Part shown: one piece after another, positions 54,047 through 61,855 of the stretch
Layout of the letters: each line of letters starts with the position of its first letter
Position numbering within the stretch: the stretch's first letter is position 1
IMG/VR virus record: IMGVR_UViG_3300017917_001996
Location: 62,001-126,000 of that record
Reading direction: 5' to 3' (one strand)
DNA length: 64,000 nt
Translations under genes and position numbers: made by a program
Notes under the pieces: generated by a model
Database searches by the model: none
Told to the model about the DNA's origin: nothing
What the model saw: the letters and a program-made list of their open reading frames with translations, nothing else

Positions 54047-55063
54047 ATGAGTAATCTATTTAAAAAAGCTGCAATTTTTACTGATATTCACTTTGGACTA
54101 AAGTCAAACAGTCAGATTCACAATGAAGACTGTTTGGCTTTTGTAAAGTGGGCTTCAGCCAAGGCTCGGCAGGAAGGTTGCGAAACTGCTATATTTTTAG
54201 GTGATTGGCATAACAATAGATCTACAATAAATATTGTTACGCTAAATTACAGCCTACAAGCACTGGAACACCTAAATGCTAATTTTGATGTGGTTTATTT
54301 TATTCCTGGTAACCATGATTTGTATTATCGTGACAAGAGGGATATACAAAGCGTGGAGTGGGCAAGACATCTCGGAAACGTCCAAATCGTTAACAATTGG
54401 TTTGTCACTGATGATGTGGTCATTGCCCCTTGGCTTGTTGGCGACGATTATAAACGTATTCCTAAACTAACCGGCAAATACATGTTCGGGCACTTTGAGT
54501 TGCCCGGTTACATGATGAACGCCATGGTTGAAATGCCCGATCACGGAGAAGTTAAGAGAGAACACTTTACTAACTTTGAACATGTGTTTACAGGGCATTT
54601 CCACAAGAGACAAACTAAAAAGAACATTACCTACATTGGCAACTGCTTTCCGCACAACTATGCAGACGCAGGCGACGATGAGCGTGGACTAACTATCCTT
54701 GAATGGGGTAAGCCCGCAGTATATCATGCATGGCCCGATCAACCCGTTTATCGAGTTTACGATCTTAGTGCAATTTTAGATCGGCCCGACGAATTACTTA
54801 AACCCGGCGTACATGCTAGAGTTAACTTAGACATCGACATTAGCTACGAAGAAGCCAGCTTTATCCGTGAAACGTTTATGGAAAGCCATAAACTGCGAGA
54901 AATTAAATTAATTCCACGCCACAACACAGAAATCGATACATCAGCTACACAAGGCAATATTGCTTTCCAGAGCGTCGATCAAATTGTAAGTAATCAATTG
55001 ACTGGTATTACCAGCGATCATTACAATACTAAGCTATTGCTTGAAATTTATCAAAACCTATAA
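54047..55063 (+). CDS. gp47: Recombination endonuclease subunit (Mre11/SbcD-like)
   Basis: TDIHFG, LGDWH, GNHD, GHFE, GHFH phosphoesterase motifs. Confidence 0.92.
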   Translation: MSNLFKKAAIFTDIHFGLKSNSQIHNEDCLAFVKWASAKARQEGCETAIFLGDWHNNRSTINIVTLNYSLQALEHLNANFDVVYFIPGNHDLYYRDKRDIQSVEWARHLGNVQIVNNWFVTDDVVIAPWLVGDDYKRIPKLTGKYMFGHFELPGYMMNAMVEMPDHGEVKREHFTNFEHVFTGHFHKRQTKKNITYIGNCFPHNYADAGDDERGLTILEWGKPAVYHAWPDQPVYRVYDLSAILDRPDELLKPGVHARVNLDIDISYEEASFIRETFMESHKLREIKLIPRHNTEIDTSATQGNIAFQSVDQIVSNQLTGITSDHYNTKLLLEIYQNL

Positions 55064-56829
55064 TGATTCGAATTAAGTCAGTAACTGCTAAAAACTTTTT
55101 ATCTATTGGTAATGTAACACAGAGCGTTAGCCTAGATCGCACAGACCTAACACTGATTCTAGGTGAAAACTTAGACTTAGGTGGCGACGACTCTGGTGCT
55201 CGTAACGGTACAGGCAAGAGCGCATTGCTTAACATTGTAAGCTATGCCTTGTACGGCTCAGCATTAACCAACATCAAGAAAGACAACTTGATCAATCGTA
55301 CCAACGGTAAAAACATGTTGGTTACTATTGATTTTGAAAAAGATGGTGTCGACTACAAAATTGAGCGTGGACGCAAGCCTAACGTCATGCGCTTCTTTGT
55401 CGGCGATCAAGAACAAAAAGTCGAAGACGAAAGTCAAGGCGACAGCAGAGAAACACAGGCTGCTATTGAAAAGTTAATCAACATGAGTCACACAATGTTC
55501 AAACACATTGTGGCACTTAACACTTACACAGAGCCCTTCTTAAGTTTAAAAGCTAACGAGCAACGCGAAATCATTGAACAATTGCTAGGTATTACCCTAC
55601 TCAGTGAAAAAGCAGAATCGCTTAAAGAGAGAATACGTGTAAGCAAGGACGGTATTCAACAAGAAGAATTCCGTATTCGTGCTATCATCGATGCTAACAA
55701 ACGCATCGAAGATCAGATCTCTGCACTAAAGCGCAGACAAACACTGTGGCAAACTAAACATCAAGAAGACTGTGAGCAGTTAAGTTTAGCCTACGATCAA
55801 CTTAATCAAATTGATATTGAGCAAGAGCTAGCTGCACATCGTGCCTTGACTGAATACAGCGAAAAATACAAACAAATCAAAGACTTAAACAGTTGGATTA
55901 AACGTTGTGAGCTAGACCAGCAGCGTGAACTTAAACTAATTGATCAACTTAAATCCGAAATTGCAAGTTTAGAAAATCACACCTGTCATAGTTGTGGACA
56001 AGCATTTCACGATGATAAACAAGAAAAACTATTGGCAGATAAGCGTAAACAACTACAAGAAGCTGCTTTACAAGCACTAGCTACAGATACGCAACTGCAA
56101 GAGCACACAGAGGCCCTAGCATTGTTAGGTGAGCTAGGCGCACAACCGCAGGTCTTCTACGATAAAGAAAGCGATGCTGTTGAACATCGTGCTACTTTGT
56201 CTAACTTGCAACAACAGTTAGCTACCAAGCGAGCCGAACAAGATCCTTATGCAGAACAGATCGAAGAAATGACTAAAACTGCATTGGAAGAAATTAATTA
56301 CGATCGTATCAATGAATTAACTAAACTCAAGGATCACGAAGAATTCTTACTTAAACTTTTAACCAACAAAGACAGTTTTATTCGTAAAAAGATCATTGAT
56401 CAAAACCTAAGTTACTTAAACTCAAGATTGAGTTACTATCTAGAAAAGATTGGATTACCACATCAAGTTGAATTCTTAAACGACTTGACTGTGAGTATCA
56501 CAGAATTAGGTAGAGACTTAGACTTTGATAACCTAAGCCGCGGTGAGCGCAACAGACTTATTTTAAGTTTGAGCTGGGCATTCCGCGATGTTTGGGAAAA
56601 CTTATATCAGAAAATTAATTTGTTGTTTGTTGACGAGCTTGTGGACTCTGGCCTAGATTCTAGTGGCATGGAAAGTTCATTGGCTATCCTTAAAAAGATT
56701 AGTCGCGACAGCAAGAAAAGCGTTTGGTTAGTAAGTCATAGAGACGAACTAGTTAGTCGTGTAGAAAACATATTGCGAGTTACTAAGAGCAATGGGTTTA
56801 CAACTTACGACACAGACGTAGAAAATTGA
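55063..56829 (+). CDS. gp46: Recombination ATPase subunit (Rad50/SbcC-like)
   Basis: GARNGTGKS Walker A, CHSC zinc hook, LSRGE signature, LFVDELVD Walker B, VSH. Confidence 0.92.
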   Translation: MIRIKSVTAKNFLSIGNVTQSVSLDRTDLTLILGENLDLGGDDSGARNGTGKSALLNIVSYALYGSALTNIKKDNLINRTNGKNMLVTIDFEKDGVDYKIERGRKPNVMRFFVGDQEQKVEDESQGDSRETQAAIEKLINMSHTMFKHIVALNTYTEPFLSLKANEQREIIEQLLGITLLSEKAESLKERIRVSKDGIQQEEFRIRAIIDANKRIEDQISALKRRQTLWQTKHQEDCEQLSLAYDQLNQIDIEQELAAHRALTEYSEKYKQIKDLNSWIKRCELDQQRELKLIDQLKSEIASLENHTCHSCGQAFHDDKQEKLLADKRKQLQEAALQALATDTQLQEHTEALALLGELGAQPQVFYDKESDAVEHRATLSNLQQQLATKRAEQDPYAEQIEEMTKTALEEINYDRINELTKLKDHEEFLLKLLTNKDSFIRKKIIDQNLSYLNSRLSYYLEKIGLPHQVEFLNDLTVSITELGRDLDFDNLSRGERNRLILSLSWAFRDVWENLYQKINLLFVDELVDSGLDSSGMESSLAILKKISRDSKKSVWLVSHRDELVSRVENILRVTKSNGFTTYDTDVEN

Positions 56830-56974: not shown

Positions 56975-57496
56975 ATGAGTGGATCAAAAAGTAAAACCAA
57001 AGGTAACAGCTGGGAGCGCACGATTGCTAAGTTTTTAACTGAGCAACACGGCGGTTCGTTTATACGAGCGCCTCATAGCGGAGCTTACATTGGTGGTACT
57101 AACTCCTTTAGAAAAGCTAGTTTGGATCAAAGCCAAATTAAAAGTTTTAAAGGAGACATTATTCCGCCTGAAACTTGGGTTCATTTTAATGCAGAAGCTA
57201 AAAATTATGCAGATTTCCCATTTCATCAACTTTATCAAGGTCCAGTGCCTATGCTAGAGAATTGGATTGAACAGCTACTTGATGTTGCCGACCCCGGTGA
57301 TCTCAACGTGCTGATCATGAAATTTAATCGCAAAGGCAGTTTTATAGCCACACAACCGACACCAAGTCTAACTCCAAATCCAAACCACTTTATTTACAAA
57401 TCCGAAAAATTTGGCACATGGTTAATTCAAGATTTCAAATCTTTCTGGCTCAACAATAAATCCCAAATCGAACTTTTAGCCACCAAGGCACAATAA
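56975..57496 (+). CDS. PD-(D/E)XK nuclease, Holliday-junction resolvase-like
   Basis: K.KGNSWER..A..L, GDII, AEAKN motifs. Confidence 0.7.
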   Translation: MSGSKSKTKGNSWERTIAKFLTEQHGGSFIRAPHSGAYIGGTNSFRKASLDQSQIKSFKGDIIPPETWVHFNAEAKNYADFPFHQLYQGPVPMLENWIEQLLDVADPGDLNVLIMKFNRKGSFIATQPTPSLTPNPNHFIYKSEKFGTWLIQDFKSFWLNNKSQIELLATKAQ

Positions 57497-57974: not shown

Positions 57975-58207
57975 TTAGAAGAAAGGCATTTTAGTTTCTT
58001 TAGTTGTTTCTAAGTTACTCTTAATGATCTCTGCGATAATCTCTCGCTCTGACCCACTCATGTCCATAATCTCTGAGTAAGTCAATCCTCCACGCATATA
58101 CCAACACATACGCAGTACTTCTTGTTTTAAGGCTTTTACATCTTTATCGTGAGCTTCTAAAAACTGCACGATCTCTGCGTCAGTTTTAAATGTTAAAAGC
58201 CTTTTGC
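57975..58207 (-). CDS. Baseplate hub assembly chaperone C-terminal part (gp51-like), probably reached by -1 frameshift from the gp26-like gene
   Basis: MCWYMRGG..Y.E...MS..ER..I motif; frame open back to the slippery site 58208-58214; only a GTG without evident SD internally. Confidence 0.6.
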
Positions 58208-59041
58208 GAAAAAATTTGCGTAATCAAAGGTTAAGTCGATGTCATAAGGAGTATGACATTCTTGGCAGCTCAGATGTAGTTGTTCGGGTTTAGCCTGTTC
58301 AACAAAACTAGAAATCTTAGCTTGCAACTGTTTGATAAAAGCAGATTCTGCATTTCGATAGAATTCATCAATATACTCTTGTTCGACTACACGAGTACCA
58401 TCACTCATTTCAATATACTCTGTGCTTTGTACGCAACTGTTAATTCCGTGTGTGTATAGTCGATTCATTGCAGCAGCTAGCTCTAAAGATTTCTTTTCTG
58501 CATCCATGTCGGCGTCGCTGAGTAAGTTTAAGATCTTTTGTTCTTCAAACTCGATCATATTAGTTTTGTTAACTGCAAAATAGTGTTGTGGTTTGAACTT
58601 AATTTTTAGATCACGATAAGCTAGTGGCTCATTATAATTTGGGCAGCTCAACTGTGCCAATGGATAACCCAAATCTACTTCGTGGGTGTTATCTTCGCCA
58701 CAGTGTGGGCATTTACTGTTAAAGCTCATGTTGTTGCCATAAGTTGCGATACGTATAGCAATCAAGATAGCATCAACATCAACGCTGGGCATTTGCCACG
58801 CATCCCGGACGTTTGGGCAACAGCTTTGAATTACATCAACAATGCCTTGTCCGTTGAGCAATGCATCGGGTGTTCTTAGTAATATTTCGTCTTTGGTACT
58901 CATTGGATATATGGGCAATTCTTGATTTGCTGGCATATCTAATGCACCGTCTACCCACCAACGGCCACCGCTAGGTAGTTTTAGATAGATAGCTGGCTGA
59001 CGAAAATGTCCAGCTAATGGGTTCGGACGCTGTAATTCCAT
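58193..59041 (-). CDS. gp26: Baseplate hub assembly chaperone, gp26-like
   Basis: NPL...FRQP..Y..LPS.G, YPM...DE....TPDALLNG, D.D..LIAIR.ATYG, CP.C and C..C motifs. Confidence 0.8.
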   Translation of the reverse strand: MELQRPNPLAGHFRQPAIYLKLPSGGRWWVDGALDMPANQELPIYPMSTKDEILLRTPDALLNGQGIVDVIQSCCPNVRDAWQMPSVDVDAILIAIRIATYGNNMSFNSKCPHCGEDNTHEVDLGYPLAQLSCPNYNEPLAYRDLKIKFKPQHYFAVNKTNMIEFEEQKILNLLSDADMDAEKKSLELAAAMNRLYTHGINSCVQSTEYIEMSDGTRVVEQEYIDEFYRNAESAFIKQLQAKISSFVEQAKPEQLHLSCQECHTPYDIDLTFDYANFFAKGF

Positions 59042-59052
59042 GATCGAATTCC

Positions 59053-59081
59053 TATAAATATAATTGAGTAAGTATATTTAT
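59053..59081. promoter_or_regulatory. Divergent pair of T4-type late promoters
   Basis: TATAAATA on + (59053-59060) and TAAATA on - (59075-59080). The same hexamer precedes many late genes: 9166, 9896, 22608(-), 31180(-), 46757(-), 47171(-), 53038(-), 61879, 63653, 63952. Confidence 0.75.
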
Positions 59082-59092
59082 CCGTAAAAAAC

Positions 59093-61855
59093 ATGGCCGA
59101 TATTGATTATGATTTATTAGCTGAAAAGCTAGCCGACGCAGTAGTTAAAGCTATGAACACATCTTCTGCGGCCAAAGACAGGGCCGCAATCTTAGACAAA
59201 GAAGACCGTGCTCGCGCTACTTCTATTGCAGAAACACTAAAATTAACCAAAGCAATCAAAGATGCAGGCAGTGCATCTTCGGCTTTTAAACGGGTACTGT
59301 TAAATCAACAAGCTAGTTATCTTGATGTAGAAAAGACTCTAGAGAAACTAGACGAAGAAATTGAAAACGATAAAGAAGCACTTAAAAAGCTAGGCGAAGC
59401 TGCCGATGGTGCAGCCGCTGCTTCTAAGCATTTTGAGCTACAGCAAAAAATACAAGATAGGGCACAACAGGCTGCTAATATAAAGTTAGCTAATTTCTAC
59501 AATGCGCTGTCTAATGCATCTTTAGGTGCAATTAAATTCTCCGATAGCATTGCAACATCTGCTTTTACAGCTGGCGGCTCGTTAGTTAAAGGATTAATGC
59601 GCGGCTCGTCAGCAGTCGAAACATCATCTGCTCTAATGAGCGCCGGCGTCGATTTGGCCAAGGACGCTGCAACAGGTGTTGCGTCAGCATTACAAGGACT
59701 TGGTACAGCCGCTTTAGTACTACCAGGTAAGTTCAAAGCCCTTGGAGTGGGCTTATTAGGATTAGGAACAGTAGTTGGATATACGTCTGATAAACTTGCA
59801 AAATTAGTCAAATTTGGTATAGACATACTTGGCGCTGAACTTGAAAAAACCATCGAAGCCTATAGGAAAACTAATCAAGCAGGTGCGTTATTTGCAGATG
59901 GCATGACAGGAATGCGTAATGCTGCTTACGAAGCCGGACTTACACTTAGCCAATTTGCTAACGTATTAACCAAAGCCAGTCCGGATTTAGCAGCAGTGGG
60001 TATGGGTGTTACCGAAGGCTCTAAGCGCATGGGCGGAGCTATTGCAGCTGGCGGCAGCGCAATGAAAAACCAATTACTAAACTTAGGATATTCGTTTGAA
60101 GAACAAGCAGGTTTAGTTGCTGAAACTATGGCCTTAATGCGCCAGTCCGGTGGACCACTAACAGCTAGTAATCAAGTTGTTGCACAAGAAACACTCAAGT
60201 ATGCAGAAAACTTACGTGTAATTAGTGCCATTACAGGTGAAGATGCAAGAAAGAAAGCTGATCAAGTACGTCAACAAGCTAACCAATTAGCCTTCCAACA
60301 AAAACTTGCAGGCATGGACGAAACACAAAGAATGGGTGTTATTAAAGCCATGCAAAACATGAGCGACCTAGAGCGTCGTAACTTCATGGACATGGTTAAC
60401 TTTGGTACTGTTATTAACAAAGAAGGTGCGGCTGCTGCGGCAATGAGTGGCGGACTTACTAATGCAGTTAACAGTTACTACCAAGCGTTTAGGTCTGGTA
60501 CTTTAGATGAACTTAGTGCAAGAAAGATTTCTGCACAAAACGCTGAACAACAGAAAAAAGATTATTTAGGACTTACTGATATTGCTACTGCACAAGCAGC
60601 CGGAATTGGTGGGCTAGCTGGCATGCTAGGTGAAATACTTGGTAGAGAACTAGAATATAGGAACAAAGCAACTGCTGAAGCTATTGCAGCCAGCGAACAA
60701 TTAGCAGCCAAACAAAAAGTAACCAACGATGGATTAACACAATCTGTTAATCAAACTGCAATTACAGTACAACAGTTGCAGATGGTCTTAGAAAAAGAAT
60801 TACTAGGATCAATATCGTTGTATGCAAACTCAGTTAAGGAAATGAATAAGTTAATCCTTACAGCGATTGAAGATCTAAGAAAATCGCAAGGTGCAGGTGG
60901 TGCTACCGCAGAAGAGCCTAGTTTGATAAAAAAGATAGGAAGAGAAGCCACAGGGTTAGCTACTGGCCTTGGGGCAGGTGCTTTAACATTATTGGGCGGC
61001 GGTGCTGCCACTATTGCAACTGGTGGTGCAGCAGCAATTCCAACAATATTAGGAACGGGTGCAGCAGCATACACAGGACGCGAGCTTGGATTAGAACTTT
61101 TTGATCGACTCGATGCATGGTTTGGTAAAAAAGAAGGTAAACGCAAAGGTGGAGTTGTCAGAGAAGGATCTAGTTCTGGCGTACTTGAAAAGCTACACCC
61201 ACCAGAGGCGGTGGTTCCTTTGCCAGATGGACGCAGCATACCTGTTACCATTAGCATGTTAAATTCTGCGTACAAAACTGATGTGCCAACACCGGATACA
61301 TCATTAGCAGATGCTTTTACTGATATAAGCGGTGCATTATCTGCAACAATTAAAGATTTGCGTTCAATGGCCGCTGATTTGTTTACCGGCGCAGCAGCAA
61401 CACTAAAATTAATCGGTGACCAACAAGCCAATGCATTACAAGATAGAACACCAAATGCTTTTGAAATGGTGCAGTTAAAAGAACTGACTGTTAGCCGTAC
61501 TATAAGCGAGTACCTAGAACCACAGCTAAATTCACTAGAGGTAAGCAAGAACATGCTAACTGAATTTAGACAAGGAATCGATACTAACCTAGCTGATCTT
61601 AAAGCAGAAGTTAAGAGATTAGCTGACGGGGCAGTTAAGCCTGCGGCACCCGAAGCGGAACCAAAGCCGCAATCAACAGCAGCAGAAGTTAACATAATTG
61701 TAGATCAACTCAGAGTCTCTAATAGAGATCTTAAAGAGACTTTGTTGGTACAAAATAAACTTCTAGAAGAAAGTGTAAAAACAATACAAGATTTATTAAG
61801 TGTATCCAGTGACACCCGAAATTACAGTCAAGCTATCGTACATAACACTCTATAA
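59093..61855 (+). CDS. Tail tape measure protein
   Basis: 920-aa Ala/Gly/Leu-rich helical protein; EKLHPPEAVVPLPDGRSIPV motif; between the hub chaperone and the portal. Confidence 0.8.
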   Translation: MADIDYDLLAEKLADAVVKAMNTSSAAKDRAAILDKEDRARATSIAETLKLTKAIKDAGSASSAFKRVLLNQQASYLDVEKTLEKLDEEIENDKEALKKLGEAADGAAAASKHFELQQKIQDRAQQAANIKLANFYNALSNASLGAIKFSDSIATSAFTAGGSLVKGLMRGSSAVETSSALMSAGVDLAKDAATGVASALQGLGTAALVLPGKFKALGVGLLGLGTVVGYTSDKLAKLVKFGIDILGAELEKTIEAYRKTNQAGALFADGMTGMRNAAYEAGLTLSQFANVLTKASPDLAAVGMGVTEGSKRMGGAIAAGGSAMKNQLLNLGYSFEEQAGLVAETMALMRQSGGPLTASNQVVAQETLKYAENLRVISAITGEDARKKADQVRQQANQLAFQQKLAGMDETQRMGVIKAMQNMSDLERRNFMDMVNFGTVINKEGAAAAAMSGGLTNAVNSYYQAFRSGTLDELSARKISAQNAEQQKKDYLGLTDIATAQAAGIGGLAGMLGEILGRELEYRNKATAEAIAASEQLAAKQKVTNDGLTQSVNQTAITVQQLQMVLEKELLGSISLYANSVKEMNKLILTAIEDLRKSQGAGGATAEEPSLIKKIGREATGLATGLGAGALTLLGGGAATIATGGAAAIPTILGTGAAAYTGRELGLELFDRLDAWFGKKEGKRKGGVVREGSSSGVLEKLHPPEAVVPLPDGRSIPVTISMLNSAYKTDVPTPDTSLADAFTDISGALSATIKDLRSMAADLFTGAAATLKLIGDQQANALQDRTPNAFEMVQLKELTVSRTISEYLEPQLNSLEVSKNMLTEFRQGIDTNLADLKAEVKRLADGAVKPAAPEAEPKPQSTAAEVNIIVDQLRVSNRDLKETLLVQNKLLEESVKTIQDLLSVSSDTRNYSQAIVHNTL

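What the first reader, a model, noticed from the sequence alone, without database searches (positions are those of the whole stretch)
57975..58230. Probable programmed -1 frameshift fusing gp26-like and gp51-like baseplate chaperones
Seen (- strand): the gp26-like gene ends GCA AAT TTT TTC GCA AAA GGC TTT TAA, containing the canonical X XXY YYZ heptamer T TTT TTC (58214-58208) four codons before its stop. A -1 slip gives ...NFF-RKRLLTFKTDAEIVQFLEAHDKDVKALKQEVLRMCWYMRGG..., running without a stop into the small downstream ORF, which has only a GTG and no evident SD. Known: tail-assembly chaperones of long-tailed phages (lambda G/GT type) are made as a short and a frameshift-extended form, encoded next to the tape measure gene; here the tape measure gene is the divergent neighbour. 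Inference: the T4-type gp26/gp51 pair of this lineage is a G/GT-like recoding system.
Basis: partly seen in the sequence, partly recalled or inferred. Interest (0 to 1): 0.75.

Follow-up and report, generated by a model that had tools for sequence, protein, structure and literature searches.

The report
Frameshifted tail chaperone gene, T4-like phage
A jumbo T4-related phage from a pond metagenome very probably makes a short and a long form of its gp26/gp51-type tail assembly chaperone from one gene by a programmed -1 ribosomal slip at T TTT TTC. The principle was already published for T4-like phages in 2022, so this is a well-supported new example, not a new mechanism.

Summary
The gp26-like gene (58193..59041, - strand, Pfam PF12322) carries an in-frame T TTT TTC (58214..58208) 21 nt before its stop, and the -1 frame is open from there for 77 more codons to 57975.

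The heptamer and the -1 extension are present in every relative examined: 24 jumbo-type loci, 80 of 80 cyanophage-type loci, KVP40 and a pelagiphage. Flanking codons vary freely. The -1 peptide is conserved from the slip site on (FF-RxRLL...), the 0-frame tail is not, and start codons are erratic or absent.

The trans-frame product is collinear with T4 gp51, and the short product corresponds to T4 gp26. Phages with in-frame long forms carry a second, short paralogue, as T4 does.

In the window's clade an 8-bp long-range RNA stem starts 6 nt after the heptamer and shows compensatory changes.

However, Vladimirov, Gautam and Davidson (Virology 2022), known to me only through two citing papers, already identified these genes as the tail assembly chaperones of T4-like phages, with polyT frameshift sites outside the T4 group.

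Novelty: new member of a known kind. No trans-frame protein has been measured here.

The parts
58193..59041 (-). Gene for the short form (TAC-N, T4 gp26 equivalent). 282 aa, with four conserved Cys (C111, C114, C259, C262) and an invariant C-terminal FF.
   Evidence: ORF list. Pfam PF12322 T4_baseplate, E 6.8e-15, 55.8 bits against a cut-off of 24.5. PHROG 150 'baseplate hub'. Alignments A1 and A6. AF2 model with pLDDT 84.9.
58208..58214 (-). Slippery heptamer T TTT TTC (X XXY YYZ in the 0 frame AAT TTT TTC), the proposed site of tandem -1 slippage of two tRNA-Phe.
   Evidence: Sequence. Invariant in phase and sequence in all relatives examined. Codon-usage control.
57975..58208 (-). -1 frame extension (TAC-C, equivalent of the gp51 C-terminal tail): 77 codons plus TAA. 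The trans-frame product is 278 + 77 = 355 aa.
   Evidence: Conserved peptide from the slip site (A2 and A7). Profile search gave 536 hits, including in-frame fusions. hhalign to the T4 gp51 family.
57975..58169 (-). The conventional 'small ORF' (GTG start, 64 aa) that a gene caller would report. I read it as the 3' part of the extension, not as a gene of its own.
   Evidence: No SD-like motif and variable first start codons among relatives. Conserved -1 residues lie upstream of the GTG.
58194..58201 (-). 5' arm (GGCUUUUA) of a predicted long-range RNA stem. It starts 6 nt after the heptamer and overlaps the 0-frame stop codon.
   Evidence: RNAalifold on 10 clade members. Pair counts: 80 of 80 cells paired, 6 cells with changes on both sides, 0 of 500 shuffles as good, slid controls 35-70% paired. 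Window fold MFE -24.7, z -2.2.
58131..58138 (-). 3' arm (UAAAAGCC) of the same stem. The stem closes a domain of about 55 nt.
59093..61855 (+). Divergent neighbour: a 920-aa Ala/Gly-rich protein, the probable tape measure protein and presumed client of the chaperone.
   Evidence: Conserved synteny: a large divergent gene sits next to the gp26-like gene in RaK2, 121Q, BF, CBB, PA5oct and 6 clade members. The RaK2 homologue is annotated as similar to a tape measure protein. Atlas feature search: 67 of 100 nearest named clusters carry the minor-tail/tape-measure family PF10145, and others carry TMP families, score 0.93. No Pfam hit.

Best explanation
One gene gives two proteins.

Most ribosomes read the gp26-like gene to its TAA and release a 282-aa short form (TAC-N, the T4 gp26 equivalent). 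A minority pause with tRNA-Phe in the P site (UUU) and A site (UUC) of U UUU UUC. Both tRNAs slip back one base onto UUU UUU. Translation then continues in the -1 frame for 77 more codons and gives a 355-aa long form (TAC-NC, the T4 gp51 equivalent).

The pause is probably helped by an RNA stem whose 5' arm begins 6 nt after the heptamer.

By analogy with lambda G/GT and with what has been proposed for T4-like phages, the shared N-terminal domain would coat the tape measure protein encoded next door. The C-terminal extension would couple that complex to hub and tail-tube assembly. Neither form is expected to remain in the virion in stoichiometric amounts.

Shown here: the site, its phase, the open -1 frame, their conservation, homology of the parts to gp26 and gp51, and the covarying stem.

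Inferred: that slippage happens, its efficiency, and the chaperone activity.
For: 1. The heptamer in phase and an open -1 frame are found in every relative examined, across three deep clades, at protein identities down to 21%.
2. Nucleotide-level constraint. Seven different preceding codons all end in T, and the first Phe is always TTT. Other FF pairs in the same genes use all four codon combinations. T4-type gp26, which has no extension, reads GAG TTC TTT.
3. The -1 peptide is conserved from the first codon after the slip (FF-RxRLL..EPEEI..). The 0-frame tail varies from 1 to 11 codons in length and in sequence.
4. Independent initiation is implausible. The first ATG lies anywhere from codon 3 to codon 50. 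The PA5oct extension has no ATG, GTG or TTG at all. In L019 a -1 stop immediately precedes the heptamer. 14 of 18 jumbo-type and 43 of 57 cyanophage-type sequences have no start with an SD-like motif.
5. Natural in-frame versions exist. T4 gp51 is the PF12322 domain plus a tail. The fused profile aligns to the gp51 family from residue 64 to 344, straight through the shift site (E 2.3e-6). About 20 of the top 150 hits of the extension profile are 319-351-aa in-frame fusions.
6. Where the long form is in frame, a separate short paralogue sits beside it (L124 and L125), as in T4. So both forms are needed, and single-gene phages need the slip to make the long one. The window's genome has one PF12322 gene only.
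7. KVP40 and S-PM2 have the canonical order tube-like gene, gp26, -1 extension, large tail protein.
8. A covarying stem sits at stimulator spacing in the window's clade. In cyanophage-type loci the 50 nt downstream are more structured than other windows (median percentile 0.07).
9. Literature: TAC genes of T4-like phages with polyT slip sites, and separate short and long genes in the T4 group (Vladimirov et al. 2022, as described in PMC10885494 and PMC12846349). Sullivan et al. 2010 note that cyanophage and vibriophage gp51 lacks the first ~200 aa.
Against: - No protein, ribosome-profiling or reporter data exist for this phage, and none were available to me for any relative.
- U UUU UUC efficiency is unknown here.
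- The downstream structure is not universal. In the jumbo-type set as a whole the 50-nt window is not clearly more structured than background (median percentile 0.29). No single consensus exists among 44 cyanophage-type sequences.
- Several relatives have an ATG overlapping the stop (ATGA or TAATG), so coupled reinitiation could add a free small protein in those lineages.
- The gp26-like fold matches no solved tail assembly chaperone and no Pfam TAC family.
- Binding to the 920-aa neighbour could not be assessed (no answer).
- The extension-alone match to the gp51 family is modest (score 21.7, E 0.005; best of 30 shuffles 17.1).
Confidence: 0.85

Rival explanations
1. The downstream ORF is a separate small gene. 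It would be translated on its own from the GTG at 58169, or by termination-reinitiation at the gp26-like stop, and give a free ~64-aa gp51-like peptide, as current genome annotations assume.
For: GenBank records annotate a separate small ORF in Phosso, BF, 121Q, CBB, SCTP-2, XacN1, S-PM2 and KVP40. Several relatives have ATGA or TAATG overlaps at the stop. 30 of 57 cyanophage-type sequences have an ATG at codon 5 of the -1 ORF.
Against: - It does not explain the invariant, phased heptamer.
- It does not explain conservation of -1 residues upstream of any start codon.
- It does not explain extensions with no start codon at all (PA5oct) or with the first ATG at codon 32-50 (RaK2, RsoM2USA, L013, L019, L023).
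- RaK2, PA5oct and RsoM2USA annotators found no ORF to call.
- In-frame fusions occur in T4 and in the L124/L125 lineage.
Confidence: 0.08
2. The frame change is made by RNA polymerase, not by the ribosome. Transcriptional slippage on the T6 run would add one U to a fraction of mRNAs, which are then read conventionally into the extension.
For: The site is a homopolymer. Some relatives have longer runs: 10 T in RsoM2USA, 8 in XacN1 and in HTVC008M. In RM378, with a T7 run, the extension is in the +1 frame, which tandem -1 slippage cannot reach.
Against: Six U is short for productive slippage by bacterial RNA polymerase (general knowledge). The run is kept at exactly T6-C in nearly all of about 100 sequences and is not lengthened. 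A structure at ribosomal-stimulator spacing covaries. No RNA runs hold this sequence, so no direct test was possible.
Confidence: 0.05
3. The arrangement is a broken gene or an assembly error: a one-base deletion in a homopolymer split a gp51-like gene.
For: Homopolymer runs are error-prone. The window comes from a metagenome assembly.
Against: The same arrangement occurs in more than 100 independent sequences, including finished genomes of isolated, viable phages. The 0-frame stop position varies while the heptamer does not.
Confidence: 0.01

Closest known systems
Tail assembly chaperones of T4-like phages (TAC-N / TAC-NC; T4 gp26 and gp51). Vladimirov, Gautam and Davidson, Virology 2022, 566:9-15
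   Same: Same protein family (PF12322). The short form plus a long form with a C-terminal domain is the same logic. As citing papers describe it, there is a polyT slip site in TAC-N genes of T4-like groups outside the T4 group.
   Different: I could not read the paper, so I cannot say whether RaK2-like jumbo phages or this pond clade were covered. The covarying long-range stem and the tandem short-plus-long lineage L124/L125 may or may not be in it. In T4 itself the two forms are separate, divergently transcribed genes with a non-slippery GAG TTC TTT.
Phage lambda G / GT, and the conserved tail-gene frameshift of long-tailed phages (Xu, Hendrix and Duda 2004; review PMC5009743)
   Same: A -1 slip at an X XXY YYZ heptamer near the 3' end of a gene next to the tape measure gene gives a short and an extended protein in a fixed ratio (for the lambda description).
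   Different: No sequence or fold similarity to known chaperones of this kind. The protein is 282 aa with a four-Cys site, about twice the usual size. Here the gene is divergent from the tape-measure-like gene, not upstream of it on the same strand. The heptamer is T TTT TTC, not G GGA AAG.
Phage P2 E / E+E' (myovirus tail chaperone frameshift on a T-rich heptamer; recalled from memory, Christie et al. 2002)
   Same: Contractile-tailed phage, -1 slip on a run of T just before the stop, extension of similar relative size.
   Different: Unrelated proteins. I did not test the P2 comparison with any tool.
Cyanophage and vibriophage 'gp51' small ORFs (S-PM2p208, KVP40.0327; Sullivan et al. 2010, PMC3037559)
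   Same: Homologous -1 extension directly after a gp26 gene that ends xxT TTT TTC. It is known to resemble only the C-terminus of T4 gp51.
   Different: There it is annotated as an independent truncated gene. The extension of the window's clade is longer (77-79 against about 60-66 codons) and only distantly similar in sequence.

Membership tests
Pfam PF12322 T4_baseplate (T4 gp26 / gp51 family) | Match to the family HMM above the curated gathering score | tested here: met
   55.8 bits against a cut-off of 24.5, E 6.8e-15, covering residues 41-279 and profile positions 15-219 of 219. Six-frame search of the window's own genome gave 55.2 bits. T4 gp26 and gp51 both match the full model.
Pfam PF12322 T4_baseplate (T4 gp26 / gp51 family) | Shared predicted fold with other 'baseplate hub' proteins of large myoviruses | tested here: met
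   AF2 model with pLDDT 84.9. BFVD gave 73 hits at E <= 0.001, top TM 0.86-0.88, all of them baseplate hub or hub assembly proteins.
Frameshifted tail assembly chaperone pair (lambda G/GT type, Xu et al. 2004) | [quoted passage not shown] | tested here: met
   The -1 frame is open from 31 nt before the stop for 83 codons. The same holds in all relatives examined.
Frameshifted tail assembly chaperone pair (lambda G/GT type, Xu et al. 2004) | Conserved slippery sequence in the overlap | tested here: met
   T TTT TTC (or T TTT TTT) is in phase in all sequences. Codon-choice control.
Frameshifted tail assembly chaperone pair (lambda G/GT type, Xu et al. 2004) | Position between the tail tube gene and the tape measure gene, directly upstream of the latter on the same strand | tested here: not met
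   In the window the gene is divergent from the 920-aa tape-measure-like gene and no tube gene is adjacent. The canonical order is met in KVP40 and S-PM2.
Frameshifted tail assembly chaperone pair (lambda G/GT type, Xu et al. 2004) | Sequence or fold relationship to established chaperone families | tested here: not met
   No Pfam TAC family at E <= 0.1. Foldseek against PDB gave best E 0.05 and TM about 0.1. VIA-align wide gave Z <= 7.5 on a helical hairpin only.
Frameshifted tail assembly chaperone pair (lambda G/GT type, Xu et al. 2004) | Trans-frame protein is made, both forms are needed for tail assembly, and both are absent from virions | not testable with these tools
   No expression data. 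Indirect only: phages with an in-frame long form keep a separate short gene. T4 gp51 is required for assembly but absent from the particle (PMC3004832).
Frameshifted tail assembly chaperone pair (lambda G/GT type, Xu et al. 2004) | Binding of the common domain to the tape measure protein | tested here: inconclusive
   Complex prediction of tape-measure-like residues 1-700 with the 282-aa protein gave 'no answer', score 0.00.
T4 gp51 C-terminal domain (Pfam PF28602 in the precomputed annotations) | Homology of the -1 extension to the tail of gp51 beyond the PF12322 domain | tested here: inconclusive
   The PF28602 model is not in the local library. The fused profile against the gp51 family aligns through to gp51 residue 248 (E 2.3e-6). 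The extension alone scores 21.7, E 0.005, at the expected place, against a maximum of 17.1 in 30 shuffles. The KVP40 and cyanophage equivalents are accepted as gp51 C-terminal homologues.

The most novel reading that the evidence does not exclude
Two details may go beyond the 2022 description of chaperone genes in T4-like phages.

(a) In the window's clade the slip is stimulated by an unusual long-range element. An 8-bp stem begins 6 nt after the heptamer, contains the 0-frame stop codon, and closes a coding domain of about 55 nt. It is maintained by synonymous Leu changes paired with amino-acid changes 55 nt downstream.

(b) The choice between 'one gene plus frameshift' and 'two paralogous genes' has switched more than once: in the T4 group with divergent genes, and independently in the L124/L125 lineage with tandem genes. 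That would make this family a natural experiment on when recoding is replaced by duplication.
Probability: 0.45. Interest if true: 0.45.

Novelty: new member of a known kind. Interest (0 to 1): 0.35.

Why it matters
- **Annotation.** None of the GenBank records I opened, and no gene call in the metagenome contigs, marks the frameshift. Some call a 40-73-aa orphan ORF with an arbitrary start. Others (RaK2, PA5oct, RsoM2USA) call nothing. So the long chaperone form is missing from the proteomes of a whole group of jumbo phages, several of which are studied for therapy.
- **T4 biology.** The result supports the view that T4 is not an exception to the rule that long-tailed phages make a short and an extended tail chaperone. 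T4 encodes them as gp26 and gp51.
- **The 'truncated gp51' puzzle.** It explains why cyanophage and vibriophage 'gp51' appears to lack its first 200 residues.
- **Testable element.** The covarying stem gives a concrete element to test for control of the short-to-long ratio.

Tried and rejected
- DNA search of the 1.4-kb region against GenBank phages: no match. Relatives are only visible at the protein level.
I used single queries instead.
- Pfam and PHROG scans of the extension: nothing.
- PF28602 (gp51 C-terminal family): not in the local library.
- hhalign of the extension against single T4 gp51 or gp26 sequences: not significant. It became informative only with the gp51 family profile.
- RNAalifold on 44 cyanophage-type sequences: no common structure. 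Subclades have different local hairpins, seen by eye only.
- Fold searches against PDB and AlphaFold DB Swiss-Prot: no relative. The claim 'structurally a known tail chaperone' is therefore not supported.
- Complex prediction with the tape-measure-like protein: no answer.
- gp19 tube family (PF06841) in the window's genome: no match.
- Sequencing runs: only DNA metagenomes hold the sequence. Read laying was not used, and transcriptional slippage could not be checked.
- Pseudogene or assembly-error reading: rejected on conservation.
- T4-type late promoter as a shared feature: only one TATAAATA in the window, so no case can be made.
- The key prior paper could not be read. Its content is taken from two citing papers.

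Full report
**What is in the window.** On the - strand, an ORF at 58193..59041 encodes a 282-aa protein ending ...DYANFFAKGF, with codons GCA AAT TTT TTC GCA AAA GGC TTT TAA. The run T TTT TTC occupies 58214..58208 and is phased as X XXY YYZ. The -1 frame has no stop from 58223 down to the TAA at 57977..57975. After a slip it reads FF-RKRLLTFKTDAEIVQFLEAHDKDV... for 77 further codons. A conventional ORF finder sees only a 64-aa GTG ORF (57975..58169). The description given to me is accurate in every detail.

**What the proteins are.** The 282-aa protein matches Pfam PF12322 T4_baseplate well above threshold and PHROG 150 'baseplate hub'. The extension matches nothing in Pfam or PHROGs. The window lies in a 250-kb IMG/VR virus record from a pond metagenome. 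Its protein-level relatives are jumbo myoviruses: RaK2, 121Q/PBECO4, BF, CBB, GAP32, PA5oct, Atu_ph07, Phosso, RsoM2USA, SCTP-2 and XacN1, at 21-30% identity. Synteny is conserved. The portal gene and a large structural gene lie on one strand, and the gp26-like gene plus a short tail region lie divergently on the other.

**Conservation of the signal.**
- In all 10 GenBank relatives an in-frame T TTT TTC (T TTT TTT in two) lies 12-42 nt before the stop, and the -1 frame is open from there for 58-78 codons past the gene's stop.
- The same holds in IMG/VR relatives and in six more members of the window's own clade at 52-72% identity.
- It reaches much further. S-PM2, pelagiphage HTVC008M and vibriophage KVP40 have it.
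- All 80 cyanophage-type loci fetched with S-PM2 gp26 have xxT TTT TTC exactly 12 nt before the stop. There are 40 different 21-nt tails around an invariant heptamer.
- Across the sets, seven different codons precede the site and all end in T.
- Elsewhere in the same cyanophage-type genes, FF is written with all four codon combinations.
- T4-type gp26, which has no extension, keeps the FF motif but writes it GAG TTC TTT.

**Which frame is read.**
- Directly after the heptamer the -1 peptide is conserved (FF-R-x-R/x-L-L, then an EPEEI-like stretch, then YMRGG..Y..A..LS..ER). The 0-frame tail is 1 to 11 codons of unrelated sequence.
- Start codons do not behave like starts. The first ATG in the -1 ORF sits anywhere from codon 3 to codon 50.
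- PA5oct has no ATG, GTG or TTG in the whole extension.
- In L019 a -1 stop immediately precedes the heptamer.
- Most sequences have no start with an SD-like motif.
- Gene callers accordingly give the small ORF arbitrary lengths of 40-73 aa, or none at all.

**Relation to T4.** T4 gp26 (208 aa) and gp51 (249 aa) both match the full PF12322 model. They are therefore paralogues, and gp51 carries about 48 extra C-terminal residues. I built the predicted trans-frame products of 18 jumbo-type genes in a script and compared their profile with a 92-member gp51 family. The alignment runs from residue 64 to 344 of the fusion and from 43 to 248 of gp51, straight across the shift site (E 2.3e-6).

The extension alone aligns to gp51 222-248 with score 21.7 (E 0.005), above 30 column shuffles (maximum 17.1) and a reversed control (16.0). 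That is modest on its own. It agrees with the accepted similarity of the KVP40 and cyanophage small 'gp51' ORFs to the gp51 C-terminus (Sullivan et al. 2010). So the short product corresponds to gp26 and the trans-frame product to gp51.

**Natural in-frame fusions and paralogues.** A profile of eight extensions found 536 representatives at E <= 0.001 in 1.84 billion proteins. Most are small ORFs. About 20 of the best 150 are 319-351-aa proteins with the extension at their C-terminus. These are PF12322 proteins in which the junction reads ...SSF-RSRIL... with non-slippery codons.

In both contigs I looked at, such a long gene is immediately preceded by a second, short PF12322 gene of 294 or 297 aa that has lost the four cysteines. 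Three arrangements therefore exist:
- one gene plus a slip;
- tandem short and long genes;
- divergent short and long genes, as in T4.

The window's genome has a single PF12322 gene. This is the strongest indirect argument that both forms are needed and that single-gene phages obtain the long one by recoding.

**Context as a chaperone.** In KVP40 and S-PM2 the order is tube-like gene (PF06841 or PF23849), gp26, the -1 extension, then a large protein. In S-PM2 that protein is 1167 aa with a tail lysozyme domain and tape-measure PHROG hits. In KVP40 it is a 656-aa hypothetical protein. This is the classical tube - G - T - tape measure order.

In the window the presumed client is the divergent 920-aa protein. 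It has no Pfam hit. Its nearest named clusters by language-model features are tape measure and minor tail families at score 0.93, and the RaK2 homologue was annotated as tape-measure-like. A complex prediction gave no answer. The AF2 model of the 282-aa protein is confident (pLDDT 84.9) but has no relative among solved structures. Its relatives in BFVD are 'baseplate hub' proteins of many large myoviruses. A natural long form models with a confident helical C-terminal extension (pLDDT 89.6, helices 271-345).

**RNA signals.** For ten members of the window's clade, RNAalifold predicts one 8-bp stem, GGCUUUUA with UAAAAGCC (window 58201..58194 with 58138..58131). Its 5' arm starts 6 nt after the heptamer and includes the 0-frame stop.
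- All 80 cells are paired.
- Two pairs show changes on both sides, in 2 and 4 sequences. These are synonymous Leu changes in the 5' arm matched by amino-acid changes in the 3' arm.
- No shuffle of 500 reaches the observed pairing or covariation, and slid registers pair in only 35-70% of cells.
- The window's 110 nt fold at -24.7 kcal/mol (z -2.2).

Ten related sequences are few, so I treat this as a good lead and not as proof. In cyanophage-type loci the 50 nt after the site are more structured than random windows of the same loci (median percentile 0.07, 18 of 30 at or below 0.1). The hairpins differ between subclades, and no common structure is found. Across the jumbo-type set as a whole the signal is weak (median percentile 0.29).

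**What is already known.** My first searches for gp26, gp51 and frameshift found nothing relevant. The 2016 recoding review states that G-T frameshifting is conserved in long-tailed phages 'except T4'.

- PRFect summarises it as T4-like phages carrying one short gene and one longer fused gene instead of frameshifting.
- A 2025 paper cites it for polyT -1 slip signals in the TAC-N genes of T4-like phages.

I could not read the paper itself. The core interpretation is therefore published. What I cannot tell is whether the RaK2-like jumbo phages, this clade, the covarying stem or the tandem-paralogue lineage were included.

**Verdict.** The mechanism is a standard tandem -1 slip and has not been measured. 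The chaperone role is inferred from homology, synteny and the literature. This is a new, unannotated member of a known recoding family, so interest is moderate to low.

Noticed in passing
L033 (Rhodothermus phage RM378, NC_004735 about 25.9-26.6 kb): The gp26-like gene ends ...TCC TTT TTT TGG AAT AAG TTA TGA. The homologous extension (FFGISYDSEEELEK...) lies in the +1 frame, not the -1 frame, after a T7 run. This implies a different recoding event (+1 or -2 slip, or transcriptional slippage) or a homopolymer error in an old sequence.
   Followed up: no
L031 (Salmonella phage Vi01, NC_015296 about 46.8-47.7 kb): The gp26-like gene ends GAA ATT TTC ATT TAA, with no X XXY YYZ heptamer (A ATT TTC). 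Yet a -1 ORF with the extension motif (YSIFEISESMPW...) follows and is open for only 13 nt before the stop. The way the extension is expressed in Ackermannviridae may differ.
   Followed up: no
L124:411-1295 and L125:196-1089 (metagenome contigs): In the lineage with tandem short and long genes, the short paralogue has lost all four conserved cysteines. In L124 it still ends AAT TTT TTC, but the -1 frame closes after three codons. In L125 the site is GAC TTC TTT.
   Followed up: partly
L005 (Pseudomonas phage PA5oct, MK797984 about 77.6-77.9 kb): The 75-codon -1 extension contains no ATG, GTG or TTG and is not annotated. The published proteome of this therapy-candidate phage therefore lacks the long form.
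   Followed up: partly
L035:4357-7860 (S-PM2p209): The large protein downstream of gp26/gp51 in S-PM2 combines an N-terminal ADP-ribosyltransferase-like region (PF01129, E 1.3e-5, residues 66-218) with a phage tail lysozyme domain and tape-measure PHROG hits.
   Followed up: no
window 59053-59060 (+): The only TATAAATA (T4-type late promoter core) in the 64-kb window lies in the 51-nt divergent intergenic region, about 33 nt upstream of the 920-aa gene's ATG. Shuffles give 6.2 occurrences on average, so the motif is depleted overall.
   Followed up: partly
window 56975-57496 (+): A PDDEXK_15 / RusA-like endonuclease gene sits where RaK2, 121Q, BF and CBB have an endonuclease VII gene, between the chaperone locus and the gp46/gp47-like recombination nuclease genes (54047-56829).
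   Followed up: no
L048, L075-L079, L086, L108, L110, L112 (cyanophage-type IMG/VR loci): A second TTTTTTC-NNN-stop string occurs about 330 to 2,100 nt upstream of the main site in ten loci. I did not check strand, frame or gene, so it may be chance.
   Followed up: no
P0249 (hit of the extension profile): A 1164-aa protein made of about 20 tandem copies of a 55-aa unit scored E 1.5e-17 through 13 short stretches. This looks like a repeat artefact, not a relative.
   Followed up: no
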